Made by a program: the position numbers and the translations under genes. From NCBI GenBank assembly GCA_029953675.1, contig JAMWBK010000008.1:124001-188000 (forward strand): a stretch of DNA of 64,000 nucleotides, read 5' to 3'. The stretch comes from Rhodosorus marinus CCMP1338. Its lineage: Eukaryota > Plantae > Rhodophyta. The notes below the pieces were generated by a model, which ran no database searches, was not told where the DNA came from, and was given only the letters and a program-made list of their open reading frames with translations. Shown here in pieces: positions 22,246 to 62,767 of this stretch (positions are counted from its first letter, which is position 1; every line of letters begins with the position of its first letter).

Positions 22246-22272
22246 CGACGAGTGCGACAGTCGAGTTAAGCG

Positions 22273-23138
22273 TTTATGCTATGCTAATAAAGCCCGTGAA
22301 AACCTCAGTTCGATTCTGAGAGTACGCACCAAGGCCACCTCTCGCACTTGTGGTTAACCACTCTACCGTCGTCATTGAGTCATCGTCTCGATGCTTTCCA
22401 GTTCCGTTCTGCCGCACGCATCTATCTCGGTTTGCCACAGGCTCCGTGGCACTCTAATCGGCCGTCTTTCTGTCAGGGATGTGAGAGCCGGATTGACGCT
22501 TGTGGCTACCACTTCCTGGGTTCCTGCGGACTGTTGCGAGGTCTCCGTACGAGGCGTCACACTCGCCTCAAGTACATCCTCAGCGAATTTTTGACTCGGA
22601 TAGGGCATACGGTTGAGGTTGAGTCGGAACTGCCCAGATCCATCTCGGACTCTGCACCGCCCCGTTGTATAGCCGATCTCCTCGTCTCCGACGCTGCTGC
22701 CAGACGCTCAACATATGTGGACCTTGCGATTACCTGCCCCGTGGCCAGCGCCCACCTCACCGCAGCCGCCCGCCGCCGGGGGGCCGCGGCTTCAGCCCTT
22801 CGAAGAGTTAAGGAACGACGGTATGCTGAGAGCATGGCCAGTCTGCCTTGCGCTGAGGGTCGCTCTCACCGGTTCCAGCCATTCATTGTGGAAAGCTTTG
22901 GTCACGTCGATAAGTCGGGTTTAGAGTGGTTGCGGAAATGTTTTGCTGAGCATCCTACTGAATATTTGGCGCTCTTGAGGCGTTTAAGTGTCTCCCTTTG
23001 GCGATATTCCAGCGACATGCTTTCCGAGGCGCGCCATCGGCGCCTGGGGTTGCATGCTTCCCTCCCTAGTTATTAGTTCATCTTCACGCCTTGCGTAGCG
23101 CTTCAGGCTATGCTAGTAAAGTCCAGTCCAATAAAGCC
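22273..23138 (+). mobile_element. 5'-truncated B1 insertion with chimeric 5' junction and 9-bp TSD
   Basis: AGTTAAGCG at 22264-22272 and 23139-23147; B1 sequence from 22332; tail TAGTAAAGTCCAGTCCAATAAAGCC. Confidence 0.9.
22293..22331 (+). tRNA. Retro-copied tRNA 3' half with CCA (not a functional gene; tRNA-His-like)
   Basis: T stem CTCAG/CTGAG (22304-08/22316-20), T loop TTCGATT, 7-nt acceptor strand AGTACGC, discriminator A, CCA at 22329-22331. Confidence 0.8.
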
Positions 23139-23147
23139 AGTTAAGCG

Positions 23148-23503
23148 GGAAAACTTTTGAGACCCCGCTACATGTATTTAAGGATTTAATTCACGATGTG
23201 TACATCGGTCTTCACTTCCTGAGACAACACGGACTAACTCTAGACTGTAGTGCTAACGCGCCTCAGCTGGTGATAAAGGCGAAGGATCCAGGTATACGTG
23301 GGATCCCAACAACGGAATCAAAGGTAAAGAAGGGAAAGGGCATCGTGAAGGAGACGGTGCGGTTAACGGTCATGGACACCGAAGATGACATCGGGGAAAG
23401 TAACACCGACGAAGGGTATGCAGGGTTCGGTGATAATAAGGGAAGCGGAAAGGATCGGAGCAGCAAGGAAAAAGGGCTTGGCGAGATCATCCGAAGCCAG
23501 TAA
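23148..23503 (+). pseudogene. Retropepsin-like (LTR-retrotransposon-type) protease C-terminal fragment
   Basis: Removing the B insertion joins ATVELSGKTFETPLHVFKDLIHDVYIGLHFLRQHGLTLDC, resembling the (I/L)LGxDFL segment of retroviral-type proteases; the catalytic DTG/DSG is absent. Confidence 0.6.
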
Positions 23504-23791
23504 CTAGGTAATTAGTTGTTGTTGTTGTTTTTGTTGTGAGGCTATGCTAGTTGTCGAGGATTGGGGTTTTGTTTCTTTTTCGGTCGCGAGCGTGTTCGTT
23601 TACGGGAAGCGCTTCCTGTGGTACGCCTTCCCCTCGATTTTCCGCGGGGCGTCGTTTGCATTTGCAACTACTTCTGTCTTCCGGGTGGGTGAGTTGCGGG
23701 GCCTTTCCTATTTGGGTTGGGTTTGGTCGATTATTCTCTCGGTGCGGTTTCATATTGGTGGTGCAACGTTTCCTTTGCGGATTCCCTCAGG

Positions 23792-25193
23792 ATGGTAGGG
23801 ATATCTCCGCACTCGACGGAGCCTCCTCCCAAGGAGGCACTGCCAGGTGGGGGACTCCGTGTTCGCCTCAGCTGCGGCACGTTTTCTTCCGAGGTTGACT
23901 TGGAAGGCGCTTCTGGCACCCAGGCGCGTTCACTTATCTCCGCTGTCACCAGCCTGATCACGGCTGCGAGTGATCGTGGAGTGCTCCCTCAGCTCACCCA
24001 GAAGCTAGGTGGGCTGGAATCGGGATTGCTGGCCAGGTCAAATTCAAATTCGGACGAGAATTTGAATTGCCCCAGAGTGGCAGCGTTGGCTGAAGGCAGT
24101 CAACATCCGGTCAATCAACATGAACCTGTCCCGGGAGGGCTGTTGCTTCTGCGCGGGACAGTACGACGTTGGGGAGCGGCAGGCCGGGCCAAAACGCGCT
24201 TCAGCGCTCGGGGACTCGAGGCAATGGTGGTGGTGACTGTGCGGCAACCGGTGTGGAGGAGACTGCAGCCGTGGACTTCCCTCTCTTGGACCAGCCCTCA
24301 GGTGGTCACCAGCTCCCGGCTACTTCGGGGGCACGTGGTGGCCGCAAGGGGGGCGCTTCGTACGCATCAGTCTTGCGGAAGGGCACCACTGCCACACGTA
24401 CGGCGGCTATGCTCCGTTTCATACCATCTCGCGAGCCTCAGGATGGACCTGTGGAGACCACTTTCCAATTTCTGTGGGTGCGAAATGTCCGGCCCCAGAC
24501 TACACGAGGACAGGTTCCGTCTATGCGAGACTTCCGGGACACTTTTGCGGAATCGTTAGGGTGCAGCCGGGGTGATTTCTTCTTCGCAAACTATGAGGGC
24601 CGCGATGTGCTGTTTTTGGTCTCCGCAACCGCCGCCAAGTACCTGGAGGCCTTGCTGGCGAAGCCTACCGAGCAGTGGCCTGAGAGCGCCCGGTGGCTGC
24701 GCTGCAACCCGCAGGTGGTTTTGCACTTCGATTTTGACCGTTTCTCGGGCAATTTCCTGTCTCCGGGAGAAACGGCAGGGCTCTCTGAGCATGAGAGCAG
24801 CGTGAAGGCGGCAGCGATCCATTGGCTACGGATTCAGCGCCTTGAGAGGATCTTGTTGGCGCGGTTCCGGTCGGGCCCTCGTCACCTGCGCATGGCGGTT
24901 TCCAGTTTCTTCGATCTGGAGAGGCGACTTGTGCTGACTTCGCGCTACAAGACAGAGCTGCAGCGGGTGGGGATTTTGGAGGGCTCTGCTTCCAGCACTA
25001 CTTCCAGCGAGAGTGGTGAGGCAGGGGAGCAGACTGAGGGCATGGCGGTGGAGGACGCCCAGGTTACTTTGCTGAAGCCCGCGGGATCCGTTCCGCGAGC
25101 CTCGCGGAGTGGGAGGCTCACGACTTTGGTGCGGATAGGAGGTAAGAGAGCGAGGACCGACTCCCCGGGTCTAAGGGGGAGAAGCACGATTAG
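23792..25193 (+). pseudogene. B1 ORF1, frameshifted
   Basis: 7-nt deletion at ~24136 and 1-nt C-run deletion at ~25163 relative to the intact ORF1 at 51659-53068. Confidence 0.85.
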
Positions 25194-25223
25194 CGCTCAG
25201 GCACGGCTGCGAGGTCGCAGCCT

Positions 25224-28200
25224 ATGGATCTACAGTCTTATGTCCTGAAGGAGGGCGGAGACTGGGGCATTTGGCGTACGCGTTTTCGGAGTTGGCTCCG
25301 GCGGTGGATTTCCTTGGAAGGAGGCTCGCTTCCCCTCCGTGGGGGCATTCCCCCAGTCGTCCTTCCTCGTGGAGACCTTCTAGTAGCTGGAACCATTCTC
25401 GATTTCATCTTCACGAGCCTGGCTCGCAACATTCGGGACACAGTCATTTGGGTTTTTCTGGGGGTCATGCCGCGCCTGATTCTGGCCCCCATTCACACAT
25501 CGGAGCGCAGATGGCGAGTACGAGACCGACTGGCCCTGTTCTTGAAGGGAGACTTCGAAGTACTACAGCGCAGCTATTTGGCGTCGTCAGCACCATCCGC
25601 CCGTCGGACTCGGCATGGCACAGTGTCGCCCGTGCCAGCTCGAGTACAGAAATTGGTAGCAGTGGGCGATTTAAGTCGAGCGGCGCGGGTTTTGGAGGGC
25701 CAGGCGCCTGTCCTCCCCTACGATGATAGTCTCGCCCAGATGGTGTCGTCTTTGTTCCCTGAGTCCGACGTGGATTTGTCCCCTGAATTCGAGGTATTCT
25801 TGGACCGTCCGGAGTTGGCCAGGTTTCGCATCGATCTGACCCTCAGTGAGTCTGACCTGGAGGATTTGCTTCGTACCTCGCGTCGGGGACGCTGTCCCGG
25901 ACCCTCCGGACTAAGAACAGAGCTATTGCAGGCCCTGAGCCAGCCTGGCCAGAGCGCGCTTCTGAGGATCCTTAACAAGTTGTTCCAGGGCGTATCGGGT
26001 GCGTCTGCGCCATGGGAACATCTCCGGCAGGCACAGCTTTGCTTGCTCACGAAACCTGACCACCAGCCGGCCCACCCGCGTCTCCGGCCGATCGGGATGG
26101 TGGAGAGCCTACGGAAGTTAGCCGGGAGGTGGCTATGCCAGCGCCTTCGCCAGCGCGTCACAGCGTTTATGGCGCCCTTGCAAGTAGGGGTGGGATTTTC
26201 TGGGGGTTGCGAACTGATCACCCATGGGATCGAGCTAGAACGCGCCAGTAGGCCGGAGTGGGGAGTCTTGGTGGTTGATTTCCGGAACGCATTCAACAGC
26301 GTGTCGCGGACGCATGCGCTAGAGGTGCTCCGACGTGTGTTTCCGGAGGCGTGGCTGTTTCTATCGGGTATTTACGGAGGGGAGAGCCTCCCCTACTTGA
26401 CAACGGAGGGCACTGTTTTTCAAGCACATACTGGCGTCCAACAAGGCGACCCTTGCGGACCTCTTCTTCATGCCTGTGCCCTACAGCTCGTACTTTTACG
26501 TCTTTCGACTGAGGTCTCGGATCTTCGAATCTGCGCGTACCACGATGACGTAACATTGCTGGGCACCCCTGACACCCTGGCTAGGGGACTGACCGCGATC
26601 GAAGCGATTGCACGTCGCGTCGGTTTGACTGTGGAAACAGAAAAATGTCGCTTTCTCCCCCCGAGGGACGTGTCGCTGAACTCTCTGCCACCCACTCTGC
26701 GACTAATCAGCGAACGTGAAGGGTTCGAACACCACGGCGTCGGATTGGGGACTGACAACTTTGTCCAAGCATCCTGCGAGCGAGTTTTGGCACGGCACAA
26801 GCAACTCACCGACGCCATTGAGCACCTACCCGACAGCATGCTGCAATCGGCCTGCTTGCTTTCCCGCTTTTGTGCCGGTCCCAGACTCAACTACTGGTTG
26901 CGCAGCCTGCCTCCAGCTTGGGGCTCGTGGATCGCGGCTAAAGCCGACGAAATGACCCTGCAACACTGGGGAACGCTCTTGGATGAGCCCCTCGATCTTG
27001 AAGCTGCTCCCGACAGGGACTTTATTCGTGCACAGATCGCTCTACCGTTGCGATTAGGGGGATTCGGCGTCGCAGACCGTGGGCTGGTATGCTCGCCAGC
27101 GGCGGTTGCCTCCTGGGCTACCGCGCTGCGAACGTTGGTGACCTTCCGGATGCGAAGTGCCTGCCTCTTGGCTCGAGCTTTGACCAACGAGGATCCAGTG
27201 AGCCTGCCGCCCCCGCTTTTGACAATTTATGATGGTCTTCAACACGCGTTCAGGAGGTGCAACGCCGTGCCGGACGCAGATCGGTCCCGCTTTCGTTCCT
27301 GGAGGGAGCTGTTATGGGGACGAGCTGAAGCGATTGAGGATTGTCCCCTCGACCGAGTTCTTGCCGATGACGGAGAGGCTAGCCCCGGGTCACCTGTTGC
27401 AGACTACCCGGGTTTGAGCCGATTGTGGAGCTCCCGCACTGATGTGATTCAACATAGCCTCACCTGGGGCCAACACAGTGCCGCTCACACAGTCATGCTC
27501 AATTCTCCTCTCACGCCGCCTACCACTGCCGCTCGTCTCCGCGGCATGGGAGGCCACCTCTCGCACTTGTGGTTAACCACTCTACCGTCGTCATTGAGTC
27601 ATCGTCTCGATGCTTTCCAGTTCCGTTCTGCCGCACGGATCTATCTCGGTTTGCCACAGGCTCCGTGGCACTCTAATCGGCCGTCTTTCTGTCAGGGATG
27701 TGAGAGCCGGATTGACGCTTGTGGCTACCACTTCCTGGGTTCCTGCGGACTGTTGCGAGGTCTCCGTACGAGGCGTCACACTCGCCTCAAGTACATCCTC
27801 AGCGAATCTTTGACTCGGATAGGGAATACGGTTGAGGTTGAGTCGGAACTGCCCAGATCCATCTCGGACTCTGCACCGCCCCGTTGTATAGCCGATCTCC
27901 TCGTCTCCGACGCTGCTGCCAGACGCTCAACATATGTGGACCTTGCGATTACCTGCCCCGTGGCCAGCGCCCACCTCACCGCAGCCGCCCGCCGCCGGGG
28001 GGCCGCGGCTTCAGCCCTTCGAAGAGTTAAGGAACGACGGTATGCTGAGAGCATGGCCAGTCTGCCTTGCGCTGAGGGTCGCTCTCACCGGTTCCAGCCA
28101 TTCCTTGTGGAAAGCTTTGGTCACGTGGATAAGTCGGGTTTAGAGTGGTTGCGGAAATGTTTTGCTGAGCATCCTACTGAATATTTGGCGCTCTTGAGGC

Positions 28201-28295
28201 GTTTAAGTGTCTCCCTTTGGCGATATTCCAGCGACATGCTTTCCGAGGCGCGCCATCGGCGCCTGGGGTTGCATGCTTCCCTCCCTAGTTATTAG
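25224..28295 (+). CDS. B1 ORF2, intact, 1023 aa: RT + CCHC + REL endonuclease
   Basis: RLRPIGMVE, DFRNAFN, GVQQGDPC, YHDD, LPLRLGGFG, CQGC...HFLGSC...RRH, ADLL...YVDL, FQPFLVESFG. Confidence 0.95.
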   Translation: MDLQSYVLKEGGDWGIWRTRFRSWLRRWISLEGGSLPLRGGIPPVVLPRGDLLVAGTILDFIFTSLARNIRDTVIWVFLGVMPRLILAPIHTSERRWRVRDRLALFLKGDFEVLQRSYLASSAPSARRTRHGTVSPVPARVQKLVAVGDLSRAARVLEGQAPVLPYDDSLAQMVSSLFPESDVDLSPEFEVFLDRPELARFRIDLTLSESDLEDLLRTSRRGRCPGPSGLRTELLQALSQPGQSALLRILNKLFQGVSGASAPWEHLRQAQLCLLTKPDHQPAHPRLRPIGMVESLRKLAGRWLCQRLRQRVTAFMAPLQVGVGFSGGCELITHGIELERASRPEWGVLVVDFRNAFNSVSRTHALEVLRRVFPEAWLFLSGIYGGESLPYLTTEGTVFQAHTGVQQGDPCGPLLHACALQLVLLRLSTEVSDLRICAYHDDVTLLGTPDTLARGLTAIEAIARRVGLTVETEKCRFLPPRDVSLNSLPPTLRLISEREGFEHHGVGLGTDNFVQASCERVLARHKQLTDAIEHLPDSMLQSACLLSRFCAGPRLNYWLRSLPPAWGSWIAAKADEMTLQHWGTLLDEPLDLEAAPDRDFIRAQIALPLRLGGFGVADRGLVCSPAAVASWATALRTLVTFRMRSACLLARALTNEDPVSLPPPLLTIYDGLQHAFRRCNAVPDADRSRFRSWRELLWGRAEAIEDCPLDRVLADDGEASPGSPVADYPGLSRLWSSRTDVIQHSLTWGQHSAAHTVMLNSPLTPPTTAARLRGMGGHLSHLWLTTLPSSLSHRLDAFQFRSAARIYLGLPQAPWHSNRPSFCQGCESRIDACGYHFLGSCGLLRGLRTRRHTRLKYILSESLTRIGNTVEVESELPRSISDSAPPRCIADLLVSDAAARRSTYVDLAITCPVASAHLTAAARRRGAAASALRRVKERRYAESMASLPCAEGRSHRFQPFLVESFGHVDKSGLEWLRKCFAEHPTEYLALLRRLSVSLWRYSSDMLSEARHRRLGLHASLPSY

Positions 28296-28390
28296 TTCAT
28301 CTTCACGCCTTGCGTAGCGCTTCATGCTATGCTAGTAAAGTCCAGTAACTAGGTACATTACCCCGGCATCATTATTTGGTCCCCGAATGA

Positions 28391-31300
28391 GGTTACGTTA
28401 GTCTGGGGTGGGGTGAGTCTGGGGTAAAAGGTAAAGTTCGTACGGAAGATAACAACAAAAGTTCGTAAGAAAGTTCGAAGATGATCGTGAGGGAGGTATG
28501 CGGGCCGTACCCCGAACCTCTTGTCATTCAGGGCCCGGACCCCTCGGGCACCCGGGAAGTTTTGCAAAGGCACCAGCACCAGTCTGATGGCAACGTGCAG
28601 GAGACACCGACGGAACAACAAGCAGGCGATGTTCAAGCAAGAACGCGGACCGAGTCTGCAGCCGCAACCGACCCGGCAGCCACATTCTTGCATCAACTGC
28701 GTAGCTTCGACAGATGCTACCAGGACCTGGGCATCGCTACGTCCGAAATTACAGACTTCTACAAAGCCGTTTTTCAACTGAACTCGAGGGTCAACAGCTC
28801 GCAAGAGCTGCAAGGTGTCACCGGACGCCTTACGGAGTTGTCCCGGAAACCGGGTATGTGGGAAGGTGGAGCCGCTACTACGAATTCTGCACCATCTCCG
28901 CATGATCTCCCGCGAGATCTCCCGCGACAGGCCGTAGGCAACCACCTCGGCCCCGAAACCCGTTACCGTAACGGTTGTCTGCCAGGAAGCAATGCCGTCC
29001 GTGATTTAGGAACCTGGCTCCCTGCGCCCCAGGGAGGGACAGGTGTCCGGGATCTAGGACACTATGCGGAGACATTCCCAGCCATCGGGGAGGGCCCTAC
29101 AAGGCCAACCTTCGCCGATTTCGCAGCACAAAAAGAACCAGCGAGAGGAGGAGATGCTCGTTCCAGAACTTCTGGACGCCCTGGACCCCAGACCCAACAG
29201 GCTGCCCTACGGCAACTGCACGCTACGGTCGGGGGGTCTGGCTGGGGACCCGATGTTGCTCCAGTCCTCGCGACGCTACGGAATGTCCGACCCCCAAGGC
29301 TGGATGAGGTGGCCCCTGCGGACTTTGCAACGGTTCTTTGCAGAGCACTGGGTATGCCCAGCTCTTATGTGGTGCATGTGGACTTTATTGCCTCCCATGC
29401 CTGCCTGCTGTGCCATCCAGACGCAATTCCGATTCTCCAAAGTGCCATCTCCCGAGGAGTTTTCCGGACTGGGATATTCGGATCCTTCACACAACGACAC
29501 GCCGATAGACAAGTAAGCCTTTACACTGGCCAGGCGCTGGACCCAGACAACCTTCTGGGTTACCTCGAACGTCAGACTATCGCTCCCGGGGATATCGCTG
29601 CCCACACGCTGAAGCGGGCCATCGAGCAGCTTATCCGCATTCGTTCGAGGATCCGCAGGCGACAAATCTCCTTCCACACTCTCGCAGCGCTCTACGAGTA
29701 TCTTGAGGGACGACTAGAGCTCCTAAAAGGCAGACAACATCCGCCTGAGGTACCCCGGGGAGTGCGCGGAACCCCCTGGGCCTGCAGCTGCTTCGAACGC
29801 AGACCCTGAAGCCTCGTCCCTTCCAGGGGATGTACAGGCAGACCGCGGGACAGTTGACGCCCAGGTTGAGACTAGCGCGACTTCCCAAGTACCTGAGAAC
29901 GCAGCACACGAGGACAATCCCCATGCGGAGCTCCTCTGCAACCTTCCGGAGCCACCTCAACAGAAGCGCTCGCGATTATCCGCCGATGGAACCGGACCGG
30001 ATACTGAGATGACTCCGGCAGCCGTGGAGACTCCACCGGATACCACTGTGACACAGGTTGCCCTTGACGGCAACCATCACGCGATGGACACGCAGGAGAG
30101 CCAGGAAAACCCAGCGCAATAATGCCGAGCAGACGTAGGGGAATCAAACGACGCCGCGACGAGCCTCTGTTCTTCTCGGATCGTCAAGACTGGATCAGGC
30201 GGTGGAGTGTCTTCGTCGACGACGTCACGGAAGGAGGCAGGCAGTGGACGCGCCTTACACAATGCCCGGTTCCCACACGGCGATTTGTGCCACGCGCCCA
30301 GGTTCAAACATGGAGCTGCCTCTTCCGTGCTGCATTAGAGCTCTCTATGGACAGCACCGCACCAACAAACGCCAGCCTGCTTCTTGTCGGACTTCCAGGC
30401 CTGGTCCTTGGACACTCTGCACTTGATGTTGGCATTCAGGTATCGCATGTGCTTGAAGGAGAATTCTCTACGGTCTGGAGCGCTCTAGAGGACAAGGCGT
30501 CTATGCTGTCGCATACTACCGCACCGCAAGGAGCTGAAGCGGTTCGACGCTAACATCTCGAGCGCCACAAGCGAGCGCTGAAACTAGCACACCTTGGCCG
30601 CCTTTCAGATGCAGCTCGGAGCCTACAGGCCACCGAAATGGCACCTTTTACCGCGGCTACGTGGAGACAACTACAAGCGCTCTTTCCCAACCCGGCGGAA
30701 GGTGACCTACCAGACGAGATTGCACACGCCCTGCAATCTTTGCTCGCTCTGAAGACCGAAACACTAAAGCGGCGGTGGGATTCAAGAAAAGCGGCCGACG
30801 AGGGCCTCATGTCGATCGTGGCACGTCTTCCTCAGGGCAAGAGCCCAGGTCCTAGCGGTCTCCGAGTGGAACACCTCCAAGGTGCAACTCAACAGACGCA
30901 AGTGGCGTTGATTCGTGTATTGCGACAACTGGCGACCGCTCCTGAGAAATTTTCCCCGGCTCTGACCCGCGCCCTTCGCAGTAGTCGACTCCTGCCGTTC
31001 GCGAAGCCCAACAAGGGTTCAGTGCCGCAGGAACATCCCGGAGTTCGCCCTATCGGAGTACCAGAAGTTTTGCGCAAGGTAGCAACGCAATGGACTCTTC
31101 ACGCGGTTATGGACAGGGTGCGTGAGCTCCTGGTGCCCTTACAACTGGGTATTGGAGTAAGTGGCGGGTGCGAACGCTCACTTCACGCGATCCAGGCCCA
31201 TTTGTCATGCGAACCCGATTCGGTGGTCCTTCGGGTAGACCTAGAGAATGCCTTTAATCGCATCGACCGACGCCTTGCCAAGCAACTGGTGGACGAACAC

Positions 31301-32196
31301 TTGCCGGAGCTTGCACCAGTGTACAGACTTGGCTATGGAAGCGACAACGCGGACTCACCGACGCTCTGTGGCTGGCGACCTTCACCTGGACAGAACGAAA
31401 CCGACACCTCTCGCCTGACTCTCCAAGCAACTACAGAGTCCAACAGGGAGATCCACTGGGGCCGGTGTTACATGCACTATCCCTGGCGCCCTTTCTAAGA
31501 GCGTTGCGAGCCAAGTTCCCCAACGAAACGATTGTTGCTATCCACGACGATATCACGATTTTCGGGTCGCTACAAGCCGTGAAGGCGTCCCTGGCATGGG
31601 CAAAAACTGTGCTCCCCTCTCTTGGAGCACGCCTGCAACTCGGCAAGTGCACTGTGTACGGGCGAACACTGACTACCACGCGAGTGGTCAACCATGAGAT
31701 TCCTGGAGTGCAAGTGACCAGAGACGGAGTCACCATCCACTCGATACCGATAGGCAGCCGAGAATATATCGAACAGGAGTGCCGGGGGCTGCAAAATAAG
31801 CTAGTAAAGTCCAAATAAGCATGAGAAACTCTTTGAGGAAATTGCCAAGCTCCCACAACCGGAGCTTACGACGCAAATTGCCCTCTTCAGGTTCTGTGCA
31901 GAAACGCGACTAGACTATGTGCTACGATGCCTCGCATACGAGTTTGGAAGAAATCTGGCATGCGAGGCCGACGTGATGACCAGATATCACCTGGAAATTC
32001 TATTCGGAGGCCTCGCTACGACAGCTGTAGAGGACGATGAGTACGCAGAGCTGATCTCGGACCAAATCGCTCTGCCCTGCCGCTGGGGAGGTTTGGGTTT
32101 CGCTACTCGAAAGCGCGTCCAACCCATCGCGTTTTACTCGTCATGGAGAAACACCTTCCGGAACAATGCAGATGAATGGCCATACCTGACTGAACT
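28391..32196 (+). mobile_element. Family D1 element, 5' part (ORF1 and RT), interrupted by a B1 insertion
   Basis: Tail block 28391-28424; ORF1 to TAA 30120-30122 (frameshift ~29730-29800); ORF2 from ATG 30122 with nonsense at 30551, frameshift ~31434 before QQGDPL, IHDD, LPCRWGGLG. Confidence 0.88.
31802..31812 (+). mobile_element. Family B tail-only micro-insertion (TAGTAAAGTCC) with 8-bp TSD
   Basis: AAATAAGC at 31794-31801 and 31813-31820; the homologous D3 site (~60880) lacks it. Confidence 0.85.
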
Positions 32197-38158: not shown

Positions 38159-38161
38159 TAA

Positions 38162-49735: not shown

Positions 49736-49755
49736 CCAACCTTTTTGCATTTTGA

Positions 49756-50645: not shown

Positions 50646-50646
50646 A

Positions 50647-51394
50647 CTGGTTTTACTAACATAGCCTGATGCGCTACGCAAGGCGTGAAAAGGAACTAAG
50701 AACTAGGTAGGAAAGCGTGAAAACCCAGGCGCCTATGGCGCGCCTCGGCAAGCATGCTACTCGAATATCGCCACAGAGAGACACTTAAACGCCGCAAAAG
50801 TTCCAAGCATTCAACAGGATGCTCAGTAAAACATTTCCGCAACCACTCCAAACCCGACTTCTCCACGTGACCAAAGCTTTCCACAATGAAAGGCTGGGAC
50901 CGGTGGGAGCGACCCTCAGCGCGAGGCAGACTGGCCATACTCTCAGCATAGCGTCGTTCCTTCGCGCGGCGAAGGGCCGAAGCCGCTGCTCCCCGGCGGC
51001 GGGCGGCAGCCGTGAGATGGGCGCTTGCCACAGGGCATGTAATCGCCAGGTAAACATATGCTGAGCGTCTGGCGGCAGCATCGGAAACGATGAGATCTGC
51101 GATACAGCGGGGCGGTGCCGTCTCCGAGACCGATCTGGGTAGTTCCGATTCCACCTCAACCGTATGCCCTACCCGAGTCAAACATTCGCTGAGAATGTAC
51201 TGAAACGGGTGTGAAGCCTCGTACGAAGACCTCTCAACAGTCCACATGAACCTAAGAAGTGGAAGCCACAAGCATCAATCCGACTCTCACATCCCTGACA
51301 GAAAGACGGCCGATTAGAGTGCCACGGAGCTTGTGGCAAACCCAAATAGATCCGTGCAGCAGAGCGGAACTGAAAGGCATCGAGACGGTGACCC
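50647..51394 (-). mobile_element. Family B3 element, 3' part
   Basis: Joins 56227 as TTLPSSL|GHRLDAF once B1 copy 3 is removed; tail GTTAGTAAAACCAG. Confidence 0.85.
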
Positions 51395-51403
51395 AGTGAC
51401 GAG

Positions 51404-54400: not shown

Positions 54401-56217
54401 TCGAATCTGCGCGTACCACGATGACGTAACATTGCTGGGCACCCTGACACCCTGGCTAGGGGGCTGACCGCGATCGAAGCGATTGCACGTCGCGTCGGTT
54501 TGACTGTGGAAACAGAAAAATGTCGCTTTCTGCCCCCGAGGGACGTGTCGCTGACCTCTCTGCCACCCACTCTGCGACTAATCAGCGAACGTGAAGGGTT
54601 CGAACACCACGGCGTCGGATTGGGCACTGACAACTTTGTCCAAGCATCCTGCGAGCGAGTTTTGGCACGGCACAAGCAACTCACCGACGCCATTGAGCAC
54701 CTACCCGACAGCATGCTGCAATCGGCCTGCTTGTTTTCCCGCTTTTGTGCCGGTCCCAGACTCAACTACTGGTTGCGCAGCCTGCCTCCAGCTTGGGGCT
54801 CGTGGATCGCTGCTAAAGCCGACGAAATGACCCTGCAAAACTGGGGAACGCTCTTGGATGAGCCCCTCGATCTTGAAGCTGCTCCCGACAGGGACTTGAT
54901 TCGTGCACAGATCGCTCTACCGTTGCGATTAGGAGGATTCGGCGTCGCAGACCGTAGGCTGGTATGCTCGCCAGCGGCGGTTGCCTCCTGGGCTACCGCG
55001 CTGCGAACGTTGGTGACCTTCCAGATGCGAAGTGCCTGCCTCTTGGCTCGAGCTTTGACCAACGAGGATCCAGTGACCCTGCCGCCCCCGCTTTTGACAA
55101 TTTATGATGGTCTTCAACACGCGTTCAGGAGGTGCAACGCCGTGCCGGACGCAAATAGGTCCCGCTTTCGTTCCTGGAGGGAGCTGTTATGGGGACGAGC
55201 TAAAGCGATTGAGAATTCTCCCCTCGACCGAGTTCTTGCCGATGACGGAGAGGCTAGCCCCGGGTAACCTGTTGCAGACTACCCGGGTTTGAGCCGATTG
55301 TGGAGCTCCCGCGCTGATGTGATTCAACATAGCCTCACCTGGGGCCAACACAGTGCCGCTCACACAGTCATGCTCAATTCTCCTCTCACGCCGCCTACCA
55401 CTGCCGCTCGTCTCCGCGCCATGGAGGCCACCTCTCGCACTTGTGGTTAACCACTCTACCGTCGTCATTGAGTCATCGTCTCGATGCTTTCCAGTTCCGT
55501 TCTGCCGCACGGATCTATCTCGGTTTGCCACAGGCTCCGTGGCACTCTAATCGGCCGTCTTTCTGTCAGGGATGTGAGAGCCGGATTGACGCTTGTGGCT
55601 ACCACTTCCTGGGTTCCTGCGGACTGTTGAGAGGTCTCCGTACGAGGCGTCACACTCGCCTCAAGTACATCCTCAGCGAGTTTTTGACTCGGATAGGGCA
55701 TACGGTTGAGGTTGAGTCGGAACTGCCCAGATCAATCTCGGACTCTGCACCGCCCCGTTGTATAGCCGATCTCCTCGTCTCCGACGCTGCTGCCAGACGC
55801 TCAACATATGTGGACCTTGCGATTACCTGCCCCGTGGCCAGCGCCCACCTCACCGCAGCCGCCTGCCGCCGGGGCGCCGCGGCTTCAGCCCTTCGAAGAG
55901 TTAAGGAACGACGGTATGCTGAGAGCATGGCCAGTCTGCCTTGCGCTGAGGGCCGCTCTCACCGGTTCCAGCCATTCATTGTGGAAAGCTTTGGTCACGT
56001 CGATAAGTCGGGTTTAGAGTGGTTGCGGAAATGTTTTGCTGAGCATCCTACTGAATATTTGGCGCTCTTGAGGCGTTTAAGTGTCTCCCTTTGGCGATAT
56101 TCCAGCGACATGCTTTCCGAGGCGCGCCATCGGCGCCTGGGGTTGCATGCTTCCCTCCCTAGTTATTAGTTCATCTTCACGCCTTGCGTAGCACTTCAGG
56201 CTATGCTAGTAAAGTCG
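51404..56217 (+). mobile_element. Full-length family B1 element, copy 3, with 9-bp TSD
   Basis: AGTGACGAG at 51395-51403 and 56218-56226; ORF2 53100-56169 broken by frameshift ~54441, TAA 55265 and frameshift ~55421. Confidence 0.92.
51659..53068 (+). CDS. B1 ORF1, intact, 469 aa
   Basis: MVGISP...SYASVLRKG...WVRNVRPQ...SKGEKHD stop; the same C-terminus occurs in the copies at 35349, 48085 and 57765. Confidence 0.88.
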   Translation: MVGISPRSTEPHPKEALPGRGLRVRLSCGTFSSEVDLEGASGTQARALISAVTSLITAASDRGVLPQLTQKLGGLESGLLARSNSNSDENLNCPRVAALAEGSQHQVNQHEPVPGQARAVASARDSTTLGSGRPGQNALQRSGTRGNGGGDCAATGVEETAAVDFPLLDQPSGGHQLPVTAGARGGRKGGVSYASVLRKGTTATRTAAMLRFIPSREPQDGPVETTFQFLWVRNVRPQTTRGQVLSMRDFRDTFAESLGCSRGDFFFANYEGRDVLFLVSATAAKYLEALLAKPTEQWPESARWLRCNPQVVLHLDFDRFSGNFLSPGETAGLSEHESSVKAAAIHWLRIQRLERILLERFRSGPRHLRMAVSSFFDLERRLVLTSRYKTELQRVGILEGSASSTTSSESGEAGEQTEGMAVEDAQVTLLKPAGSVPRASRSGRLTTLVRIGGKRARTDSPGSKGEKHD

Positions 56218-56226
56218 AGTGACGAG

Positions 56227-58497
56227 GGCAGCGTGGTTAACCACAAGTGCGAAAGGTGGCCTCCCATGCCGCGGAGGCGAGCGGCGGTGGTAGGCGGTGT
56301 GAGGGGAGAGTTGAGCAAGATTGCGTGAGCGGCACTGTGTTGGCCCCAGGTGAAGCTATGTTGAATCACATCAGTGCGCGAGCTCCACAATCGGCTCAGA
56401 CCCGGGTAATCTGGAACAGGTGAACCGGGGCTGGCTTCCCCCTCGTCGGCGAGGACTCTGTCTATGGGAGAGTCCTCGATGGACTCAGTGCGTCCCCATA
56501 ATAGCTCTCTCCAGGAGCGGAACTTGGATCGATTCTCGTCCGGCACGGCGTTGCACTTACTGAACGCCTGTTGCAGAGCATCATAGATACTCAAAAGCGG
56601 TGGCGGAAGGGTCGCGGGGTCTTCGCTAGACAGTGCTCTAGCCAAAAGGCAGGCACTGCGCATCCGAAAACTCACCAAGGGGCGAAGCGCGGTTGCCCAG
56701 GAGGAGACCGCCGCAGGCGAGCATACGAGTCCACGGTCGGCCACTCCAAATCCACCTAATCGCAACGGTAGGGAAATCTGGGCCCGAATGAGGTCCCTTT
56801 CAGGAGCCGCTTCAGCATCCAGGGTTTCATGCAAGAGCGTTCCCCAGTGCTTCAGCATCGCCTCGTCCGCCTTGGCTGCCATCCACGAGCCCCAATGTGG
56901 TGGAAGGCTTCGCAGCCAGTAATTCAGCCGGGGGCCGGCACAAAAGCGGGAAAGCAGGCATGCAGATTGTAGCATGCTGTCCGGTAGGCGCTCAGTGGCG
57001 TCAGTGAGCTGCTTATGGCGTGCTAAAACTCGTTCGCAGGAGTCTTGCACGAAGTTGTCACTCCCCAAACCGACGCCATGGTGCTCGAGCCCCTCACGTT
57101 CACCAAATACTCGGAGACTAGATGGCAGGGAGCCCGTCGAAACTTCACGCGGGGCGAGAAAACGGCATTTTTCGGGTTCTACGGTCAGACCTACTCCACG
57201 TGCTATTGCTTCGATCTGGGCCCGTGCCGCTCGACTCAGGTCGCCAACCGCCACCAATTTCTGCACTCGAGTCGTCACGGGCGGGACTGGCCCAGTCCGA
57301 GCCCGACGGACAGAGTGCTCCGATGACGCCAAGTAGCTTTGCTGCAACACCTCAAATTCCCCCTTCAGGAACATGGCCAGTCGTTCTCGGACGCGCCATC
57401 TGCGCTCCGATGTGTGAGTGGGTGCCAGAATCAGGCGCGGCATGACCCCTAAAAATTCCCACATGACGGTGTCGCGAGGGTTAAGCGCCAGGATCGTGAA
57501 GATGAAGTCCAGGATGGTCCCCGCCACTAAGAGCTCTCCGCGAGGTAGAGAGGCAGGCGGAATCCTGCCACGGAGGAGAAGCGAGCCGCCTTCCGAAGCA
57601 ATCCATCGCCGGAGCCAACTCCGCAGGCGCTTACGCCAGATGCCCCAGTCTGCGCCCTCCTTCAGGACATAAGACTGGACTTTACTAGCATAGCCTGAAG
57701 CGCTACGCAAGGGACATAAGACTGCAGGTCCATGGACTGCGACCTCGCAGCCGTTCCCGGGGAGCTAATCGTGCTTCTCCCCCTTAGACCCGGGGGAGTC
57801 GGTCCTCGCTCGTTTGCCTCCTAACCTCACCAAACTGGTCAACCGGCCACTCCGCGAGGCTCTCGGGATGGCTCCCCCGGGCTTCAACAAAGTAATAGGG
57901 GCGTTCTCGACCGACATGCCCTCCGGCTCCCCTTCCTCGCCACTCGCACTGGAAGTGGTGCTGGGAGCGAAGCCCTCTAGTACTCCCAAACTCCGTAGCT
58001 CTGCCTTGTGACTGCAGGTCAGCACAAGGTGCCTCTCCCGGTCGAAAAAGGCAGAGGCGGCTGCGCGCAGATGGCGTGGACCCGACGCAAAACGCTCCAA
58101 AAGTATCCGCTCCATGCGATGAATGCGAAGCCAATGGATGGCTGCGGCTTTCACGTTGGTCTCGTGCTCAGAGAGCCCTGCTGTTTCTCCGGGAGAGAGG
58201 AAAGTGCCCGAAAAACGGTTGAACCCGAAATGCACTACGACCTGGGGTTGAGAACGCAACCAGCGGGCGCTCTCAGGCCACTGCTCGGTAGGCTTCGCCA
58301 GCAGGGCCTGCAGGTACTTTGCCGCGTTCGATGTGACCAGGAAGAGAACATCTCGACCCTCGTAGTTGGCAAATATAAAGTCTTCCCGACGGCAGCCCAA
58401 GGATTCTGCGAAAATGTTGCGGAAATCGCGCATGTTCGGCACCTGGCCACGGGTTGTCTGCGGCCGAACGTTCCGCACCCACAAGAACTGCAAGCTC
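56227..58497 (-). mobile_element. Family B3 element, 5' part (ORF1 C-half and ORF2 lacking the RT core)
   Basis: ORF1 57765-58493; ORF2 ATG 57733; junction LSRAARA|QIEAIARG at ~57220. Confidence 0.85.
57678..57711 (-). mobile_element. 34-nt B1 3'-end micro-insertion with 13-bp TSD
   Basis: GGACATAAGACTG at 57665-57677 and 57712-57724; the insert is the last 34 nt of B1. Confidence 0.92.
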
Positions 58498-58519
58498 GTG
58501 TCCGTGACTACTAGGACAG

Positions 58520-59433: not shown

Positions 59434-59745
59434 CGTAACCCCAGACTAACGTAACCGTAAGCTTTACTGGGCAACTGCCTACTGCAGCGCAACACTACGT
59501 CTAATCCTATCTAGGGAAGAACTTACTGGAACCCCGCTACCGGGGTCTCATGCTACGTTCAAAAGAAAAAACAGGCACCAGCGGGTTGTCCAGCTGGTCC
59601 ACGCGCAAAGCGCCTAATGCTATCTCTGCGTTACCTCGCCATAGTTGCCGGTTTATCTGGGATCTCACGTCTCTCAGCTCCTCACTCCTGTGCAGTAGGT
59701 GTTTGCACCCCAGACTAACGTAAGCGTAAACTTTACTGGGCATAC
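59434..59745 (-). mobile_element. Two stacked family D 3' ends with tails
   Basis: 59434-59707 is near-identical to 37890-38145; tail blocks at 59434-59456 and 59708-59723. Confidence 0.88.
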
Positions 59746-59749
59746 CCCT

Positions 59750-61290
59750 AACCTACGCCCCATATACTTCCCTTGCAGAGGTGACACGACCGTCACGTCC
59801 AGGGCATACAGCTGAAATGTCCTCGGATGCGTAGAAATGATATCCGGTCTTAGTCGGTAGTTCTCGAAGTACCCCTCCGGTTCTTGCTTAATGTCGATGA
59901 AATTCCAGCGATTCAGCCATCGCGCCAGCTCCTACAGATTTCGTCATGCCTTCGCTGCCATAGGCCCGTCGATGTTGGGCAGTGGTGAAACCTTTGTACG
60001 CCGTTAGTACCATGTATACTACCACAGCGAGTACACTTTTCCGTAGTCCGCAGCCCCGGAATCGCTAGCCCCAGTAGTTGTTGGATATTCACCTGCATTT
60101 CGGTCGAGCTCAACTTCTTCAGCTCCAACGTCGGCAGTTCGCGCAACCAGACTCCGGATCCGGAGCCCGCGGCGGACCTGATTCGAGCATGATGTTCGCC
60201 GGAGATGCGCGGATTGTTAACCAGGGGTTGGAATGCGCAATGGTTTGCCTCCCGAGAGAGAGTTTGTTGTGTAGAACCAATATTCCAATCGCCACAGTCT
60301 TCTGGGGCGTCTTCTGGGGGGTTTTCCCTCGTCTGCTGCAGGTTGGCAAGTCTTCTGATCCGGGGCGCAGTTTCGGGGCGCAGCCTACGTTGTATCGCTA
60401 GAGCAGATGATCGGATCTGGTCTGCGAGTTGTTCTGTCGACCATTGTAGTCGCGTCGCGGTGTTCGTAGCCGGAATTTTGTCTGTATAAACCTGCCTCTC
60501 CAGCTCAGCGATGTAAGGTCAGTCTCCCGGATTGCTTCGAAAGGTATTTTTCCAGGCCGAGTAGTAAGCTATAGGCTGGATACGCCGTCGAGTAGCAAAC
60601 CCCAATCCTCCCCACCGGCAAGGCAGCGCAATCTGTTCCCAGATGTGTCCCAGGCACTCCTCGTCGTCCATGGCAGAGGTAGTAAGGCCTCCCAGTAAGG
60701 TTTCCAGGTGATATCTGGTCATGGTATTCGCCTCCCGTGCCAGACTGCGGCCGAACGGGTAGGCTAGGCATCGTAGAAGATAATCTAGGCGCGTTTCAGC
60801 GCAGTACCCGAACAATGCTACCTGTGCGTTAAGTTCATGTTGCGGTGGCTGTGCTATTTCCTTGATGAGCCTTTCGTGCTTATTTTGAAGCGCACGGCAC
60901 TCGTGCTCGATATATTGCCGGTTTCCTAGCGGAATCGAATGGATAGTGACGCCGACTCGGCTAACATGTACGCCAGGTATCTCGCGATTGATGGCTCGCG
61001 CCGTCGTCAAGGTTCGGCCGTATAGAGTGCATTTGTTGAGTTGCAGGCGGGCCCCAAGAGCAGGGAGCATAGTTCGGTTCCAGGCTAGTGCTTGCTTCAG
61101 TTCCTGCAGGGGTCCCACGATGGTATTATCGTCATGCATAGCGACTATCGTTAGATCGGAGAACTTTGTTCGCAGAGCCTTTAGGAACGGTGCGAGGGCT
61201 AGTGCATGTAGCACCGGCCCAAGCGGGTCACCCTGTTGTACTCCCGTAGCTGCTGGAGCGTCAGTCGTGAGTACTCCGTTTGGTTCTCTC
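59750..61290 (-). mobile_element. Family D3 ORF2 fragment (RT through REL)
   Basis: GVQQGDPL, MHDD, LPCRWGGLG, nonsense at 60519, CTRC...HHC...RRHD, LRPDII...YALDV. Confidence 0.88.
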
Positions 61291-61344
61291 CAGGTGCCTA
61301 GTCGTTGGACCGTGGTCGATGTGCAGCTTGACCAGACCATTTCC

Positions 61345-61530
61345 TAATAGTAGAAGCATCAATCACAGTACTCATTTCGGACCAGCCCAGGTCATCTTAT
61401 AGCCTCCTCACGGCGCTGTCCTTGACCTTGTGGCGTTGCAACGCCGCATTATTGTTGGACGCAGGTCATCAGCGTATTGTTTCTCGCTTTTCAGCGTAGT
61501 TAGGCTCTGATTAAACGGAACGGAACTCAT
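61345..61530 (+). mobile_element. 3' end of a further family (F)
   Basis: SLLTALSLTLWRCNAALLLDAGHQR...SA stop 61497-61499, homologous to the A/B C-termini; then ATTAAA and CGGAACGGAAC. Confidence 0.65.
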
Positions 61531-61539
61531 TCCTTGTCT

Positions 61540-61970
61540 AGCGCCCATCTCACGGCTGCCGCCCGTCGCCGGGGAGCAGCTGCTTCGGCCCTTCGCCGCG
61601 TCAAGGAACGACGGTATGCTGAGAGTATGGCCAGCCTGCTTCGCGCTGAGGGTCGCTTCCATCGGTTCCAACCTTTCATTGTGGAAAGCTTTGGTCACGT
61701 AGAGAAGTCGGGTTTGGAGTGGTTGCGGAAATGTTTCACTGAGCATCCTGTTGAATACTTGGAAGTTTTGCGGCGCTTAAGTGTCTCTCTGTGGCGATAT
61801 TCGAGCAGCATGCTTGCCGAGGCGCGCCATCGGCGCCTGGGTTTGCACGCTTCCCTACCTAGTTCTTAGTTCCTTTTAACGGTTTGCGTAGCGCTGTAGG
61901 CTATGCTAATACGCCTTTCGTAGCGCATCAGGCTATGTTAGTAAAACCAATAAAGCCAATAAAGCCAGTA
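61540..61970 (+). mobile_element. B2-type 3' fragment followed by a second short 3' UTR and (AATAAAGCC)2 tail
   Basis: REL C-terminus to 61869; UTR to ~61910; second UTR CGCCTTTCGTAGCGCATCAGGCTATGTTAGTAAAACC. Confidence 0.88.
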
Positions 61971-62153
61971 TAGACAAGTCCCCATAAACCAGTTCTGTTC
62001 CCCATTCTTTTAAAAACGCTGCTCTTCGCAAGTTTCTAACCATGCATTGACGGAATGACCTTCATCTAAGGCTCTTCTTGTTAGCAGTGTTGATCCGACA
62101 TTTATTTCAAACCCAAGTTTAAAGAAAGACAACCTAAGTGTACAAGCTTATTG

Positions 62154-62163
62154 GAATAAAGCC
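62154..62163 (+). mobile_element. Family B tail-only micro-insertion (GAATAAAGCC) with 9-bp TSD
   Basis: AGCTTATTG at 62145-62153 and 62164-62172. Confidence 0.75.
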
Positions 62164-62767
62164 AGCTTATTGTAATCCTTTTGGCAAATATCTGATGAAA
62201 CTTCGCGTTCCAACATCGCCCGGAGAAAGAGGGTTCGACACGAACAATTCCGCTTTCGTGAAACTCCTTCCCGCTAACCGTTCTATGCGATTCGATCGTG
62301 AAGTTCACACCAATACGCAATAGAATCAATCCACTTAAGAACTCACCCTTCTCAAGAATTTCAACTTTTGCTTTTACAACAACTCTCGCTTCTTCTCCCT
62401 CTTACCATTCTATCCTTGTCTATCACTACTCGGATTTTTGATATTACTATATTATACCAAGTCCATATGTCGCTAATCGACGGTCGCTATGATTCATCAT
62501 CAAGCATATAGAAAAACCATTAAATCAAGAGTGACAGTCTGTCACGCCCAGAAATGCTCACTATTCAACTCCAGAACCAAAATTCCTACAAGCAGATGTG
62601 CTATAAATGTTAGCAGATTATGACTGATCCGCACGCATCGAATGCTCCACATCGGATGCTCCGCATCGAATGCTCCCCTGAAACTCTACGTAAACACCTA
62701 CTGTAGTATGCCGAGGGGATAGGCATTTTCTTTCTTCGTTTGAGGGCCTTTGTTTTCTTTATTTTGT

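What the first reader, a model, noticed from the sequence alone, without database searches (positions are those of the whole stretch)
22264..62172. B-family TSDs start with (CC)AG(T), the continuation of the element's own tail
Seen, in element orientation: AGTTAAGCG (22264/23139), CCAGTAACTAGGTA (23497/28342), AGTTCAGT (32189/36969), AGTGACGAG (51395/56218), CAGTCTTATGTCC (57665/57712), AGCTTATTG (62145/62164). The exception AAATAAGC (31794/31813) resembles the alternative tail CCAATAAAG. A TSDs start with TCG/GT(TC) and D TSDs with GT(T), matching their own tails. Known: L1 priming uses poly(A) annealing to T-rich nicks. Inference: a tail-programmed targeting rule in REL elements, in which 2-5 nt of RNA-DNA pairing rather than a long recognition site picks the target; this could be reprogrammable.
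Basis: partly seen in the sequence, partly recalled or inferred. Interest (0 to 1): 0.82.

Follow-up and report, generated by a model that had tools for sequence, protein, structure and literature searches.

The report
Red-alga retrotransposons insert at CNAGT sites
The repeats flanking these R2-like jumping genes of the red alga Rhodosorus marinus really do begin with AGT, but this fits an ordinary short cutting-site preference plus a few bases of RNA-DNA pairing, as already known for other LINE elements, not a new programmable targeting rule.

Summary
Observation confirmed. All seven flanking-repeat (TSD) pairs are at the stated coordinates. Three have independent empty sites. Five more B-family insertions from other contigs of the same genome (Rhodosorus marinus GCA_029953675.1) follow the rule at most positions.

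Over 12 events the target reads C(-2) N(-1) | A(+1) G(+2) T(+3): C 11/12, A 11/12, G 11/12, T 9/12, each p<=2e-4. Position -1 is unconstrained.

The elements are R2-like non-LTR retrotransposons with a restriction-like endonuclease (RLE). This rests on the RT domain, CCHC/RH/D..D/K motifs and best fold matches to R2 proteins.

Interpretation partly supported.
- For pairing of the RNA tail (..CC-AGU) with the nicked DNA end: 5-nt overlaps, tail-unit number differing between sister copies, and a recurring AGTAAAGTCC duplication bounded by AG(T).
- Against "pairing rather than a recognition site": the conserved C at -2 lies outside the primer, while -1 is free. That points to a protein-read motif.
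- The A and D claims weaken with more data. A-family TSDs start G, A, T or C. D has only two defined cases.

The principle is published for RTE, L2, CR1 and L1 elements, and for R2, which needs at least 4 nt of tail pairing. Verdict: new member of a known kind, moderate-to-low interest. Reprogrammability is untested.

The parts
23511..28341 (+). Full-length B element (copy c), tail ..GCTATGCTAGTAAAGT. TSD CCAGTAACTAGGTA at 23497-23510 and 28342-28355.
25224..28295 (+). Intact ORF2 (1023 aa): reverse transcriptase, linker, CCHC motif and restriction-like endonuclease.
   Evidence: ORF. RVT_1 E=1.3e-15. R2 sequence hits covering RT and the CCHC/RLE region. Conserved C823, C826, C841, H852, E873, D906, K936. 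[quoted passage not shown] Best fold hits are R2 proteins, E about 1e-22.
24169..25248 (+). Upstream ORF1-like frame of B. It is 36% identical to A ORF1 and has no Pfam domain.
22264..23147 (+). Copy b with its TSD AGTTAAGCG (22264-22272 and 23139-23147). Parts: TT; a 20-nt B tail piece at 22275-22294; a tRNA 3' piece ending in CCA at 22295-22331; B 3' 807 nt at 22332-23138 with the composite tail ..TAAAGTCCAGTCCAATAAAGCC.
31794..31820 (+). Event d: AAATAAGC [TAGTAAAGTCC] AAATAAGC inside D1. The same tail|target junction carries a 1142-nt B piece in L001 and L003.
32189..36976 (-). Full-length B copy k (32197-36968), tail ..TAAAGTCCAGTCC. TSD AGTTCAGT. It is inserted in D1.
   Evidence: Empty site at L001 21636-21643.
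51395..56226 (+). B copy e (51404-56217), tail ..TAAAGTCG. TSD AGTGACGAG. The upstream flank ends in CC.
57665..57724 (-). Event g: a 34-nt B 3' piece (57678-57711) with the 13-nt TSD CAGTCTTATGTCC, inserted in the ORF2 start of a diverged B copy.
   Evidence: Paralogue empty site.
62145..62172 (+). Event m: AGCTTATTG [GAATAAAGCC] AGCTTATTG.
44936..49714 (-). Diverged (80%) full-length B copy j, tail ..GCTAATAAAGCC followed by AGCTCATAC. No TSD found.
49755..51402 (-). Head-to-tail array of three B 3' pieces. Junctions are ..AAAACC AGTA TTTATGCTAATAAAGCC AGTACA.. and ..AATAAAGCC|CACCTCACC (tail joined directly to internal B sequence).
61540..61966 (+). B 3' piece f, tail ..GTTAGTAAAACC AATAAAGCC AATAAAGCC followed by AGTATAGAC. 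It is paralogous to the array at 50-51 kb.
16651..21410 (+). Full-length A element (16659-21402), tail ..CCGATTAAACCATTCG. TSD TCGTAGAC. RT ORF at 18133-20640 and RLE ORF at 20637-21350.
41784..42036 (-). A copy A3 (41795-42025), tail ..CCATTCATTC. TSD AGTCCGCCAAC. This is an exception to 'TCG/GT'.
451..475 (+). A mini-insert: GTATTGAC [CATTCGTTC] GTATTGAC.
1709..1742 (-). A mini-insert: GTTCCTGGGA [CCATTCGTTCGTTC] GTTCCTGGGA.
21447..21472 (+). D mini-insert: GTATTTTG [TCTGGGGTTA] GTATTTTG.
28390..38165 (+). D1 element, interrupted by B copy k. Its tail is ..AGTAAAGCTTACGGTAACGAAGGTTTGGGGTAA.
59438..61300 (-). D2 (5'-truncated), tail ..AAAGCTTACGGTTACGTTAGTCTGGGGTTAC. Possible 6-nt TSD GTGATT.

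Best explanation
The B, A and D repeats are R2-like non-LTR retrotransposons of Rhodosorus marinus. They carry a C-terminal restriction-like endonuclease and integrate by target-primed reverse transcription.

For B, the ribonucleoprotein nicks the bottom strand at a short degenerate motif. On the top strand in element orientation this reads 5'-C-N-|-A-G-T-3'. That gives about 450 candidate sites in this 64-kb window, so insertion is not site-specific.

The C at -2 is read by protein (inferred), because it lies outside the primer.

Reverse transcription starts at the CC that ends the 3' UTR. The template RNA most likely runs a few bases past CC as ..CC-AGU. One reason is that the red-algal poly(A)-type signal (A/G)UAAA sits only 3-4 nt before the element end. 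Another is that every donor copy is itself followed by AGT (inferred).

The nicked DNA end ..ACT-3' can therefore pair with 1-5 nt of RNA. This pairing fixes the start point and produces the observed overlap between tail and TSD. Realignment during this step gives the CCAGT and AGTAAAGTCC tail duplications, the 9-14-nt abortive 'mini-inserts' and the template-jump chimeras.

The bias in TSD starts is therefore the joint footprint of a nick-site preference and primer-template pairing. The logic is the same as L1 (TTTT/AA plus poly(A)) and R2 (28S site plus a few rRNA bases on the template).
For: RLE architecture.

Target logo from 12 events with both TSD copies, three of them with empty sites: -2 C 11/12, +1 A 11/12, +2 G 11/12, +3 T 9/12, -1 unconstrained. 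The window holds 447 C.AGT sites.

Pairing and realignment:
- c, e and n6 have CCAGT in the target, and g has CAGTC. These match the internal tail sequence TAAAGTCCAGTCC.
- Sister copies c and k share 3 derived SNPs yet carry 1 versus 2 CCAGT units. The outgroup copy b carries 2.
- An AGTAAAGTCC|AGTAAAGTCC|AG(T) duplication occurs at three loci with different flanks. A variant, AGTAAAGCCC x2, occurs at a fourth.
- In family A, the first TSD base tracks the tail variant: G after ..CGTTC in 5/6, A after ..CATTC in 3/3 (Fisher p=0.048). Tail variants are not bound to SNP lineages.

UAAA and GUAA are the dominant poly(A) signals in the red alga C. merolae (PMC6413133). All three tails carry such a motif and none has poly(A).

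Precedents: R2 needs at least 4 nt of tail-primer pairing (PMC13580325). RTE, L1, L2 and CR1 show 3' overlaps and a tail/TSD correlation (PMC6007223).
Against: - The RNA 3' end has not been seen. Two tail-to-RNA junctions (22294|22295 with a tRNA piece, and 50096 with internal B sequence) end at ..GCC with no AGT. This could mean the RNA ends at CC and pairing plays no part.
- The sample is 12 B events from four TE-rich stretches of one genome. Some duplicated tails may be inherited from one master rather than arising independently.
- The A-family association is borderline (p about 0.05, n=9).
- No biochemical data exist for this endonuclease.
Confidence: 0.55

Rival explanations
1. Endonuclease preference alone. 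The RLE cuts at CN|AGT, the RNA ends at ..CC, and reverse transcription starts without any pairing. The AGT seen inside longer tails is a passive carry-over of donor flanks (short 3' transduction) or later DNA slippage.
For: - C is conserved at -2 outside the primer while -1 is free.
- The tail always stops at CC when the target lacks GT or T at +2 or +3 (d, m, j, n1).
- Tail|RNA junctions at 22294 and 50096 end in GCC without AGT.
- All three related families have (A)GT or T-rich TSD starts.
Against: - It does not explain why tail duplications are bounded by AG(T) at several loci.
- It does not explain why sister copies differ by one CCAGT unit.
- It does not explain why, within family A, the first TSD base follows the tail variant.
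- In R2, the closest studied enzyme, tail-primer pairing is required (PMC13580325).
Confidence: 0.22
2. The endonuclease nicks with little or no specificity. The 2-5 nt of pairing between the RNA tail and the nicked DNA decides which nicks become insertions, so a changed tail would retarget the element.
For: - Conservation falls from +1 to +3 (11/12, 11/12, 9/12), as expected for pairing at a primer end.
- 5-nt overlaps occur in c, e, g and n6.
- A natural A-family 'tail swap' shows an association.
- ORF2 has no recognisable N-terminal zinc-finger or Myb DNA-binding domain.
Against: - The -2 C (11/12) cannot come from primer pairing. Position -1, which contiguous pairing with CCAGU would select, is at background.
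- A-family TSD starts are heterogeneous despite a common tail core.
- In R2, protein zinc-finger and Myb motifs bind DNA next to the insertion site (PMC4838377). Tail homology supports TPRT there (PMC13580325).
Confidence: 0.12
3. Artefact of delimitation. AGT is the true end of the element, and the apparent TSD start is element sequence counted twice.
For: Longer tails contain ..CCAGTCC, so AGT can look like element sequence.
Against: - Empty sites for k, g, d and n6 carry the AGT, CAGT or AAAT before insertion.
- The upstream TSD copy is preceded by unrelated flank in every event.
Confidence: 0.02

Closest known systems
R2 (28S rDNA-specific RLE non-LTR retrotransposon)
   Same: - Same ORF2 architecture: RT, linker, CCHC and a PD-(D/E)XK-like endonuclease. 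R2 structures are the best fold matches.
- TPRT, with a few template bases that match the target pairing with the nicked primer. Avian R2 needs at least 4 nt (PMC13580325).
- Chimeric junctions here look like template jumping onto RNA 3' ends, a behaviour I recall for R2 RT from my own knowledge.
   Different: - No rDNA or other unique target. The motif is degenerate, CN|AGT, with insertions in other TEs and intergenic DNA.
- An extra upstream ORF.
- No N-terminal zinc finger or Myb detected.
- TSDs of 5-14 bp.
- Only 15-17% identity to R2 proteins in the structural alignments.
- RT phylogeny not done.
RTE / L2 / CR1 'stringent' LINEs and their SINEs with microsatellite-like 3' tails (Nishiyama & Ohshima 2018, PMC6007223)
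   Same: - Short repeat units at the 3' end that vary in number.
- The first TSD base correlates with the tail repeat.
- 1 to several bp of overlap at the 3' junction.
- A published proposal that the RNA tail affects cleavage-site choice and/or priming by base pairing.
   Different: - Those elements use an N-terminal AP-type endonuclease, not an RLE.
- Their reported overlap in animals is only 1-2 bases.
- RTE has an additional upstream T-stretch signal.
L1: endonuclease consensus TTTT/AA plus poly(A) annealing to the T-rich primer
   Same: The nick-site preference and the template 3' end are mutually complementary, so both give the same footprint.
   Different: These elements have no poly(A) tail, no APE endonuclease, and a different motif.
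HERO-clade and other non-site-specific RLE elements (PMC4640811)
   Same: RLE elements that insert without a unique target.
   Different: Clade membership could not be tested here because no reference RT set is on hand.

Membership tests
RLE (restriction-like endonuclease) non-LTR retrotransposons | Non-LTR type reverse transcriptase domain | tested here: met
   RVT_1 E=1.3e-15. Best PDB sequence hits are R2 proteins, then LINE-1 ORF2p.
RLE (restriction-like endonuclease) non-LTR retrotransposons | [quoted passage not shown] | tested here: met
   - Motifs in ORF2: CQGC..H..C, RTRRH, IADLL, YVDLA, VKERRY.
- Conserved C823, C826, C841, H852, E873, D906 and K936 across 20 homologues.
- DSSP: H842-865, E869-872, E892-896, E901-910, H927-946, E956-963.
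- Whole-protein fold hits to R2.
- No Pfam model matches this domain.
RLE (restriction-like endonuclease) non-LTR retrotransposons | No N-terminal AP-type endonuclease | tested here: met
   RVT_1 is the only Pfam hit to the whole ORF2, and the first 226 aa have no Pfam hit.
RLE (restriction-like endonuclease) non-LTR retrotransposons | Footprints of target-primed reverse transcription: 5' truncation, intact 3' ends, TSDs, no LTRs | tested here: met
R2 clade proper | Insertion at a fixed site in 28S rDNA | tested here: not met
   Targets are other TEs and unique DNA that share only CN|AGT.
R2 clade proper | N-terminal zinc finger and Myb DNA-binding motifs; a single ORF | tested here: not met
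   The first 220 residues have no Cys/His motif and no Pfam hit. A separate upstream ORF is conserved between A and B.
R2 / R4 / NeSL / CRE / HERO / Dualen clade assignment | Position in the RT phylogeny | not testable with these tools
   No reference set of clade RTs is on hand. The nearest database proteins are unnamed and only 32-39% identical.
LINEs showing 3'-junction microhomology with repeat-type tails | Tail made of short units that vary in number between copies | tested here: met
   - B: CCAGT and AGTAAAGTCC units.
- A: TTCG, TCG and ATTC units.
- D: 16-nt unit GGTTACGTTAGTCTGG.
LINEs showing 3'-junction microhomology with repeat-type tails | TSD start continues the tail more often than chance | tested here: met
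   - B: the AGT statistics.
- A: by my hand count of how far each TSD start continues its own tail repeat (junctions read), 8 of the first 9 events match at least 1 nt, against an expected 25%. Later A events are more mixed.
- D: too few defined TSDs.
   The -2 C is conserved in 11/12 although it lies outside the primer. Position -1 is not conserved.

The most novel reading that the evidence does not exclude
The RNA 3' end (..CCAGU for B) takes part in choosing the nick site itself. It would probe the melted bottom strand across the future nick, which would account for -2 C as well as +1 to +3. In these RLE elements, which lack N-terminal DNA-binding domains, a changed tail would then shift where insertions go.
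Probability: 0.1. Interest if true: 0.75.

Novelty: new member of a known kind. Interest (0 to 1): 0.35.

Why it matters
It gives a clean natural record of how a non-site-specific R2-like element starts reverse transcription. The record comprises a 4-base degenerate target motif, 1-5 nt of template-primer overlap, tail slippage, many 9-14-nt abortive insertions and jumps onto other RNA 3' ends, including a mature tRNA.

R2 proteins are being developed for gene insertion, so a relative with a minimal target requirement and an intact ORF2 could be a useful comparison enzyme. It does not establish a new or programmable targeting principle.

Tried and rejected
- Exact-product look-ups of ORF2 and of my reading of the ABC-transporter ORF found nothing. 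The gene calls differ or are masked.
- A metagenome scan for the B tail found nothing.
- ORF2 homologues in the protein database are at most 39% identical, so no annotated TE copies could be fetched that way.
- The source genome was reached only through a host gene. Three TE-rich stretches of the same assembly then became available (L001, L003, L005). L002 holds no TE.
- No TSD could be found for B copies j, f and h, L003 5500, L005 9668, several A copies, or most D-tail junctions.
- The 10198(-) TAGTAAAGTCC match is part of a 72-nt tandem repeat and was dropped as chance.
- Direct repeats of 8 nt with 5-60-nt spacers are common by chance, about 48 expected. Only those whose spacer equals a tail end were accepted.
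- Small hairpins just upstream of the tails are predicted but do not differ from shuffles, z -0.3 to -0.9. They were not used as evidence.
- Rfam does not recognise the 37-nt tRNA piece, and ARAGORN finds no tRNA gene in the window, L001 or L002. That identification rests on reading the T-arm, acceptor strand and CCA.
- Pfam finds nothing in ORF1 or the nuclease domain.
- C at -1, which contiguous pairing with CCAGU would predict, is not enriched.

Full report
**Source and setting**

The window is Rhodosorus marinus (red alga), assembly GCA_029953675.1, contig JAMWBK010000008.1, about 124-188 kb.
- A 307-aa host ORF (7986-8909, minus strand) is on record there.
- The fetched locus L004 reads identically to the first 210 bases of the window.
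- The window contains an ABC-transporter gene (2171-6235) and a dense nest of non-LTR retrotransposons.
- Three related families are present.

| Family | Copies in the window | Tail |
|---|---|---|
| B | Full-length at 23511-28341, 32197-36968(-), 51404-56217; an 80% diverged copy at 44936-49714(-) | ..GCTATGCTA(G/A)TAAAG(T)CC |
| A | 16659-21402 | ..CCGATTAAACCATTC plus variable units |
| D | About 28390-38165, split by a B insertion | Ends in a 16-nt repeat, GGTTACGTTAGTCTGG |

Sources.

**What the elements are**

B ORF2 (25224-28295, 1023 aa) is intact.
- It has an RT domain.
- Its C-terminus aligns to the CCHC/endonuclease part of R2.
- It keeps the CCHC, RH, E, D, D and K positions across 20 distant homologues.
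- Its best structural matches are R2 proteins (E about 1e-22, TM 0.5-0.6 over about 950-1080 columns), ahead of LINE-1 ORF2p.
- These are the motifs that define the RLE of R2 (PMC4838377).

It differs from R2 in three ways.
- It has no N-terminal zinc finger or Myb.
- It has an extra upstream ORF.
- It has no rDNA target.

RLE elements without a unique target are known (HERO clade; PMC4640811). Clade assignment could not be tested here.

**The observation**

Exact strings spanning both junctions each occur once.

The leading bases belong to the target.
- The empty site of copy k exists on another contig (L001 21636-21643).
- Paralogues give empty sites for g and d.
- The window's own D1 gives the empty site for a further event, n6, in L005.

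Five more B events with both TSD copies came from three other TE-rich stretches of the same assembly (L001, L003, L005).

With the nick placed after the tail's CC, the 12 targets give the logo below.

| Position | Result | p |
|---|---|---|
| -2 | C 11/12 | 5.8e-6 |
| -1 | No preference (C 5/12) | 0.21 |
| +1 | A 11/12 | 7.5e-7 |
| +2 | G 11/12 | 5.8e-6 |
| +3 | T 9/12 | 1.7e-4 |
| +4, +5 | No preference | - |

AGT is 1.29% of trinucleotides. The window holds 447 C.AGT sites. The bias is therefore real, but the motif is short and common.

**Evidence that the RNA tail pairs with the nicked end**

1. Longer tails read TAAAGTCCAGTCC. In c, e and n6 the target supplies CCAGT, and in g CAGTC, exactly where the tail stops. 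That is 5 nt of overlap.
2. Copies c and k are sisters (three shared derived SNPs) yet carry one and two CCAGT units. The outgroup copy b carries two plus an extra AATAAAGCC. Unit number therefore changes during retrotransposition.
3. The 10-nt unit AGTAAAGTCC is duplicated, always followed by AG(T), at three loci with different flanks. A variant unit is duplicated at a fourth. A cDNA end ..ACT-3', made by copying the internal AGU, can realign on a terminal AGU. This would give exactly that product (inference).
4. In family A the base after the tail is G for ..CGTTC tails (5/6) and A for ..CATTC tails (3/3). Fisher p=0.048. The tail variants occur in both SNP lineages.
5. All tails carry (A/G/U)UAAA, the type of poly(A) signal found in a red alga (PMC6413133). 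In B it sits only 3-4 nt before the element end, and no copy has poly(A). Transcripts probably run into the flank, which for every donor starts with AGT (inference).

**Evidence that pairing is not the whole story**

- The C at -2 lies on the far side of the first-strand nick and cannot be part of the primer.
- Position -1, which contiguous pairing with CCAGU would also select, is at background. A protein-read C-N-|A-G-T motif is the simplest reading.
- Where the target lacks G or T at +2 or +3 (d, m, j, n1), the tail still ends at CC.
- Two junctions where a B tail is joined to another RNA-derived segment end in GCC without AGT (22294|22295 and 50096).
- The A-family TSD starts are heterogeneous: G 5, A 4, T 3, C 1 of 13.
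- D has only two defined TSDs, and about ten other junctions do not start with GT.

**Comparison with what is known**

- One-to-several-bp overlaps between LINE 3' ends and the target are published. So are a correlation between the first TSD base and the tail repeat, and the proposal that the RNA tail influences cleavage-site choice or priming. These cover RTE LINEs and SINEs, with references there to L1, L2, CR1, I factor, R1Bm and R2Ol (PMC6007223).
- For the closest enzyme class, avian R2 needs a template 3' tail with at least 4 nt that pair with the primer (PMC13580325). Protein zinc-finger and Myb motifs bind DNA next to the insertion site (PMC4838377).
- The finding is therefore a new family-level instance of a known mechanism in a little-studied lineage.
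It is contradicted for -2.

**Caveats**

- The sample is twelve B events from TE islands of one genome.
- Event d is not cleanly an 11-nt insertion. The same junction carries a 1142-nt B piece elsewhere.
- The RNA 3' end and the enzyme's nicking preference are inferred, not observed.

Noticed in passing
window 22273-22331: The 5' end of B copy b is a chimera. It reads TT, then a 20-nt B tail piece (TATGCTATGCTAATAAAGCC), then 37 nt that read as the 3' part of a mature tRNA. The tRNA features are T stem CTCAG/CTGAG, T loop TTCGATT, acceptor strand AGTACGC, discriminator A and a non-encoded CCA. The piece starts at about nt 39, just 3' of position 37. It looks like serial template jumps onto RNA 3' ends. 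Rfam and ARAGORN do not call it.
   Followed up: partly
window 451-475, 1709-1742, 21447-21472, 31794-31820, 62145-62172; L001 14102-14137; L003 11094-11122; L005 about 770-820: All three families leave 'mini-inserts' of only 9-14 nt of tail, flanked by 8-14-nt TSDs. These are apparent abortive TPRT events and are unusually frequent.
   Followed up: partly
window 597-732 and 1041-1175: A 135-nt direct repeat (94% identical) flanks the 308-nt A copy at 733-1040. It is either a very long TSD (R9 elements of rotifers make exceptionally long TSDs, cited in PMC13580325) or an older duplication.
   Followed up: no
L001 19886-21027 and L003 about 20527 onward, versus window 31802-31812: The junction TAGTAAAGTCC|AAATAAGCATGAG of mini-insert d recurs in another D copy. 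There the B part is 1142 nt long and no D 5' part lies upstream. Possible causes are a homology-driven template switch, a deletion, or a shared ancestor. Unresolved.
   Followed up: partly
window 49755-51402(-); L003 11040-11620(-): Head-to-tail arrays of short B 3' pieces. In L003 the units are separated by a 17-19-nt spacer, AGT(T)AAACC(C)ATGCT(T/G)GCC.
   Followed up: no
L003 about 9570-9640(-): A B tail piece is preceded by its own inverted copy (TAGCATAGCCTGAAGCGCTACG TAAG GCTTCAGGCTATGCTAGTAAAGTCC..). The layout resembles twin priming or snap-back.
   Followed up: no
window 12436-12480, 28390-28425, 59438-59460(-): The D tail is a 16-nt minisatellite (GGTTACGTTAGTCTGG)n with variable copy number and variable end point. 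D/E tails also sit tail-to-tail (GGGGTTACCCC) at window 14267-14293 and L001 about 5800-5840.
   Followed up: no
window 61497-61525: Another tail type, ..GGCTCTGATTAAACGGAACGGAAC (ATTAAA followed by CGGAA-type repeats), points to a further related family.
   Followed up: no
window 2073-6239 versus L001 9901-14059: The ABC-transporter region has an 87%-identical paralogous copy on contig JAMWBK010000011.1 with TE insertions at different places. The TE copies themselves are 97-98% identical between the two contigs.
   Followed up: partly
window 23511-23560: The 5' UTR of full-length copy c contains AGGCTATGCTAGT, the same 13 nt as in its 3' tail region. Copies e and 21626-21660 lack the 8-nt CTATGCTA there.
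   Followed up: no
L003 16292(+), 16447(-), 11343(-): An older B subfamily with tail ..GTTAGTAAAACC is followed by ACCAT at two different loci. ACCAT is either part of that subfamily's tail or a different target start.
   Followed up: no
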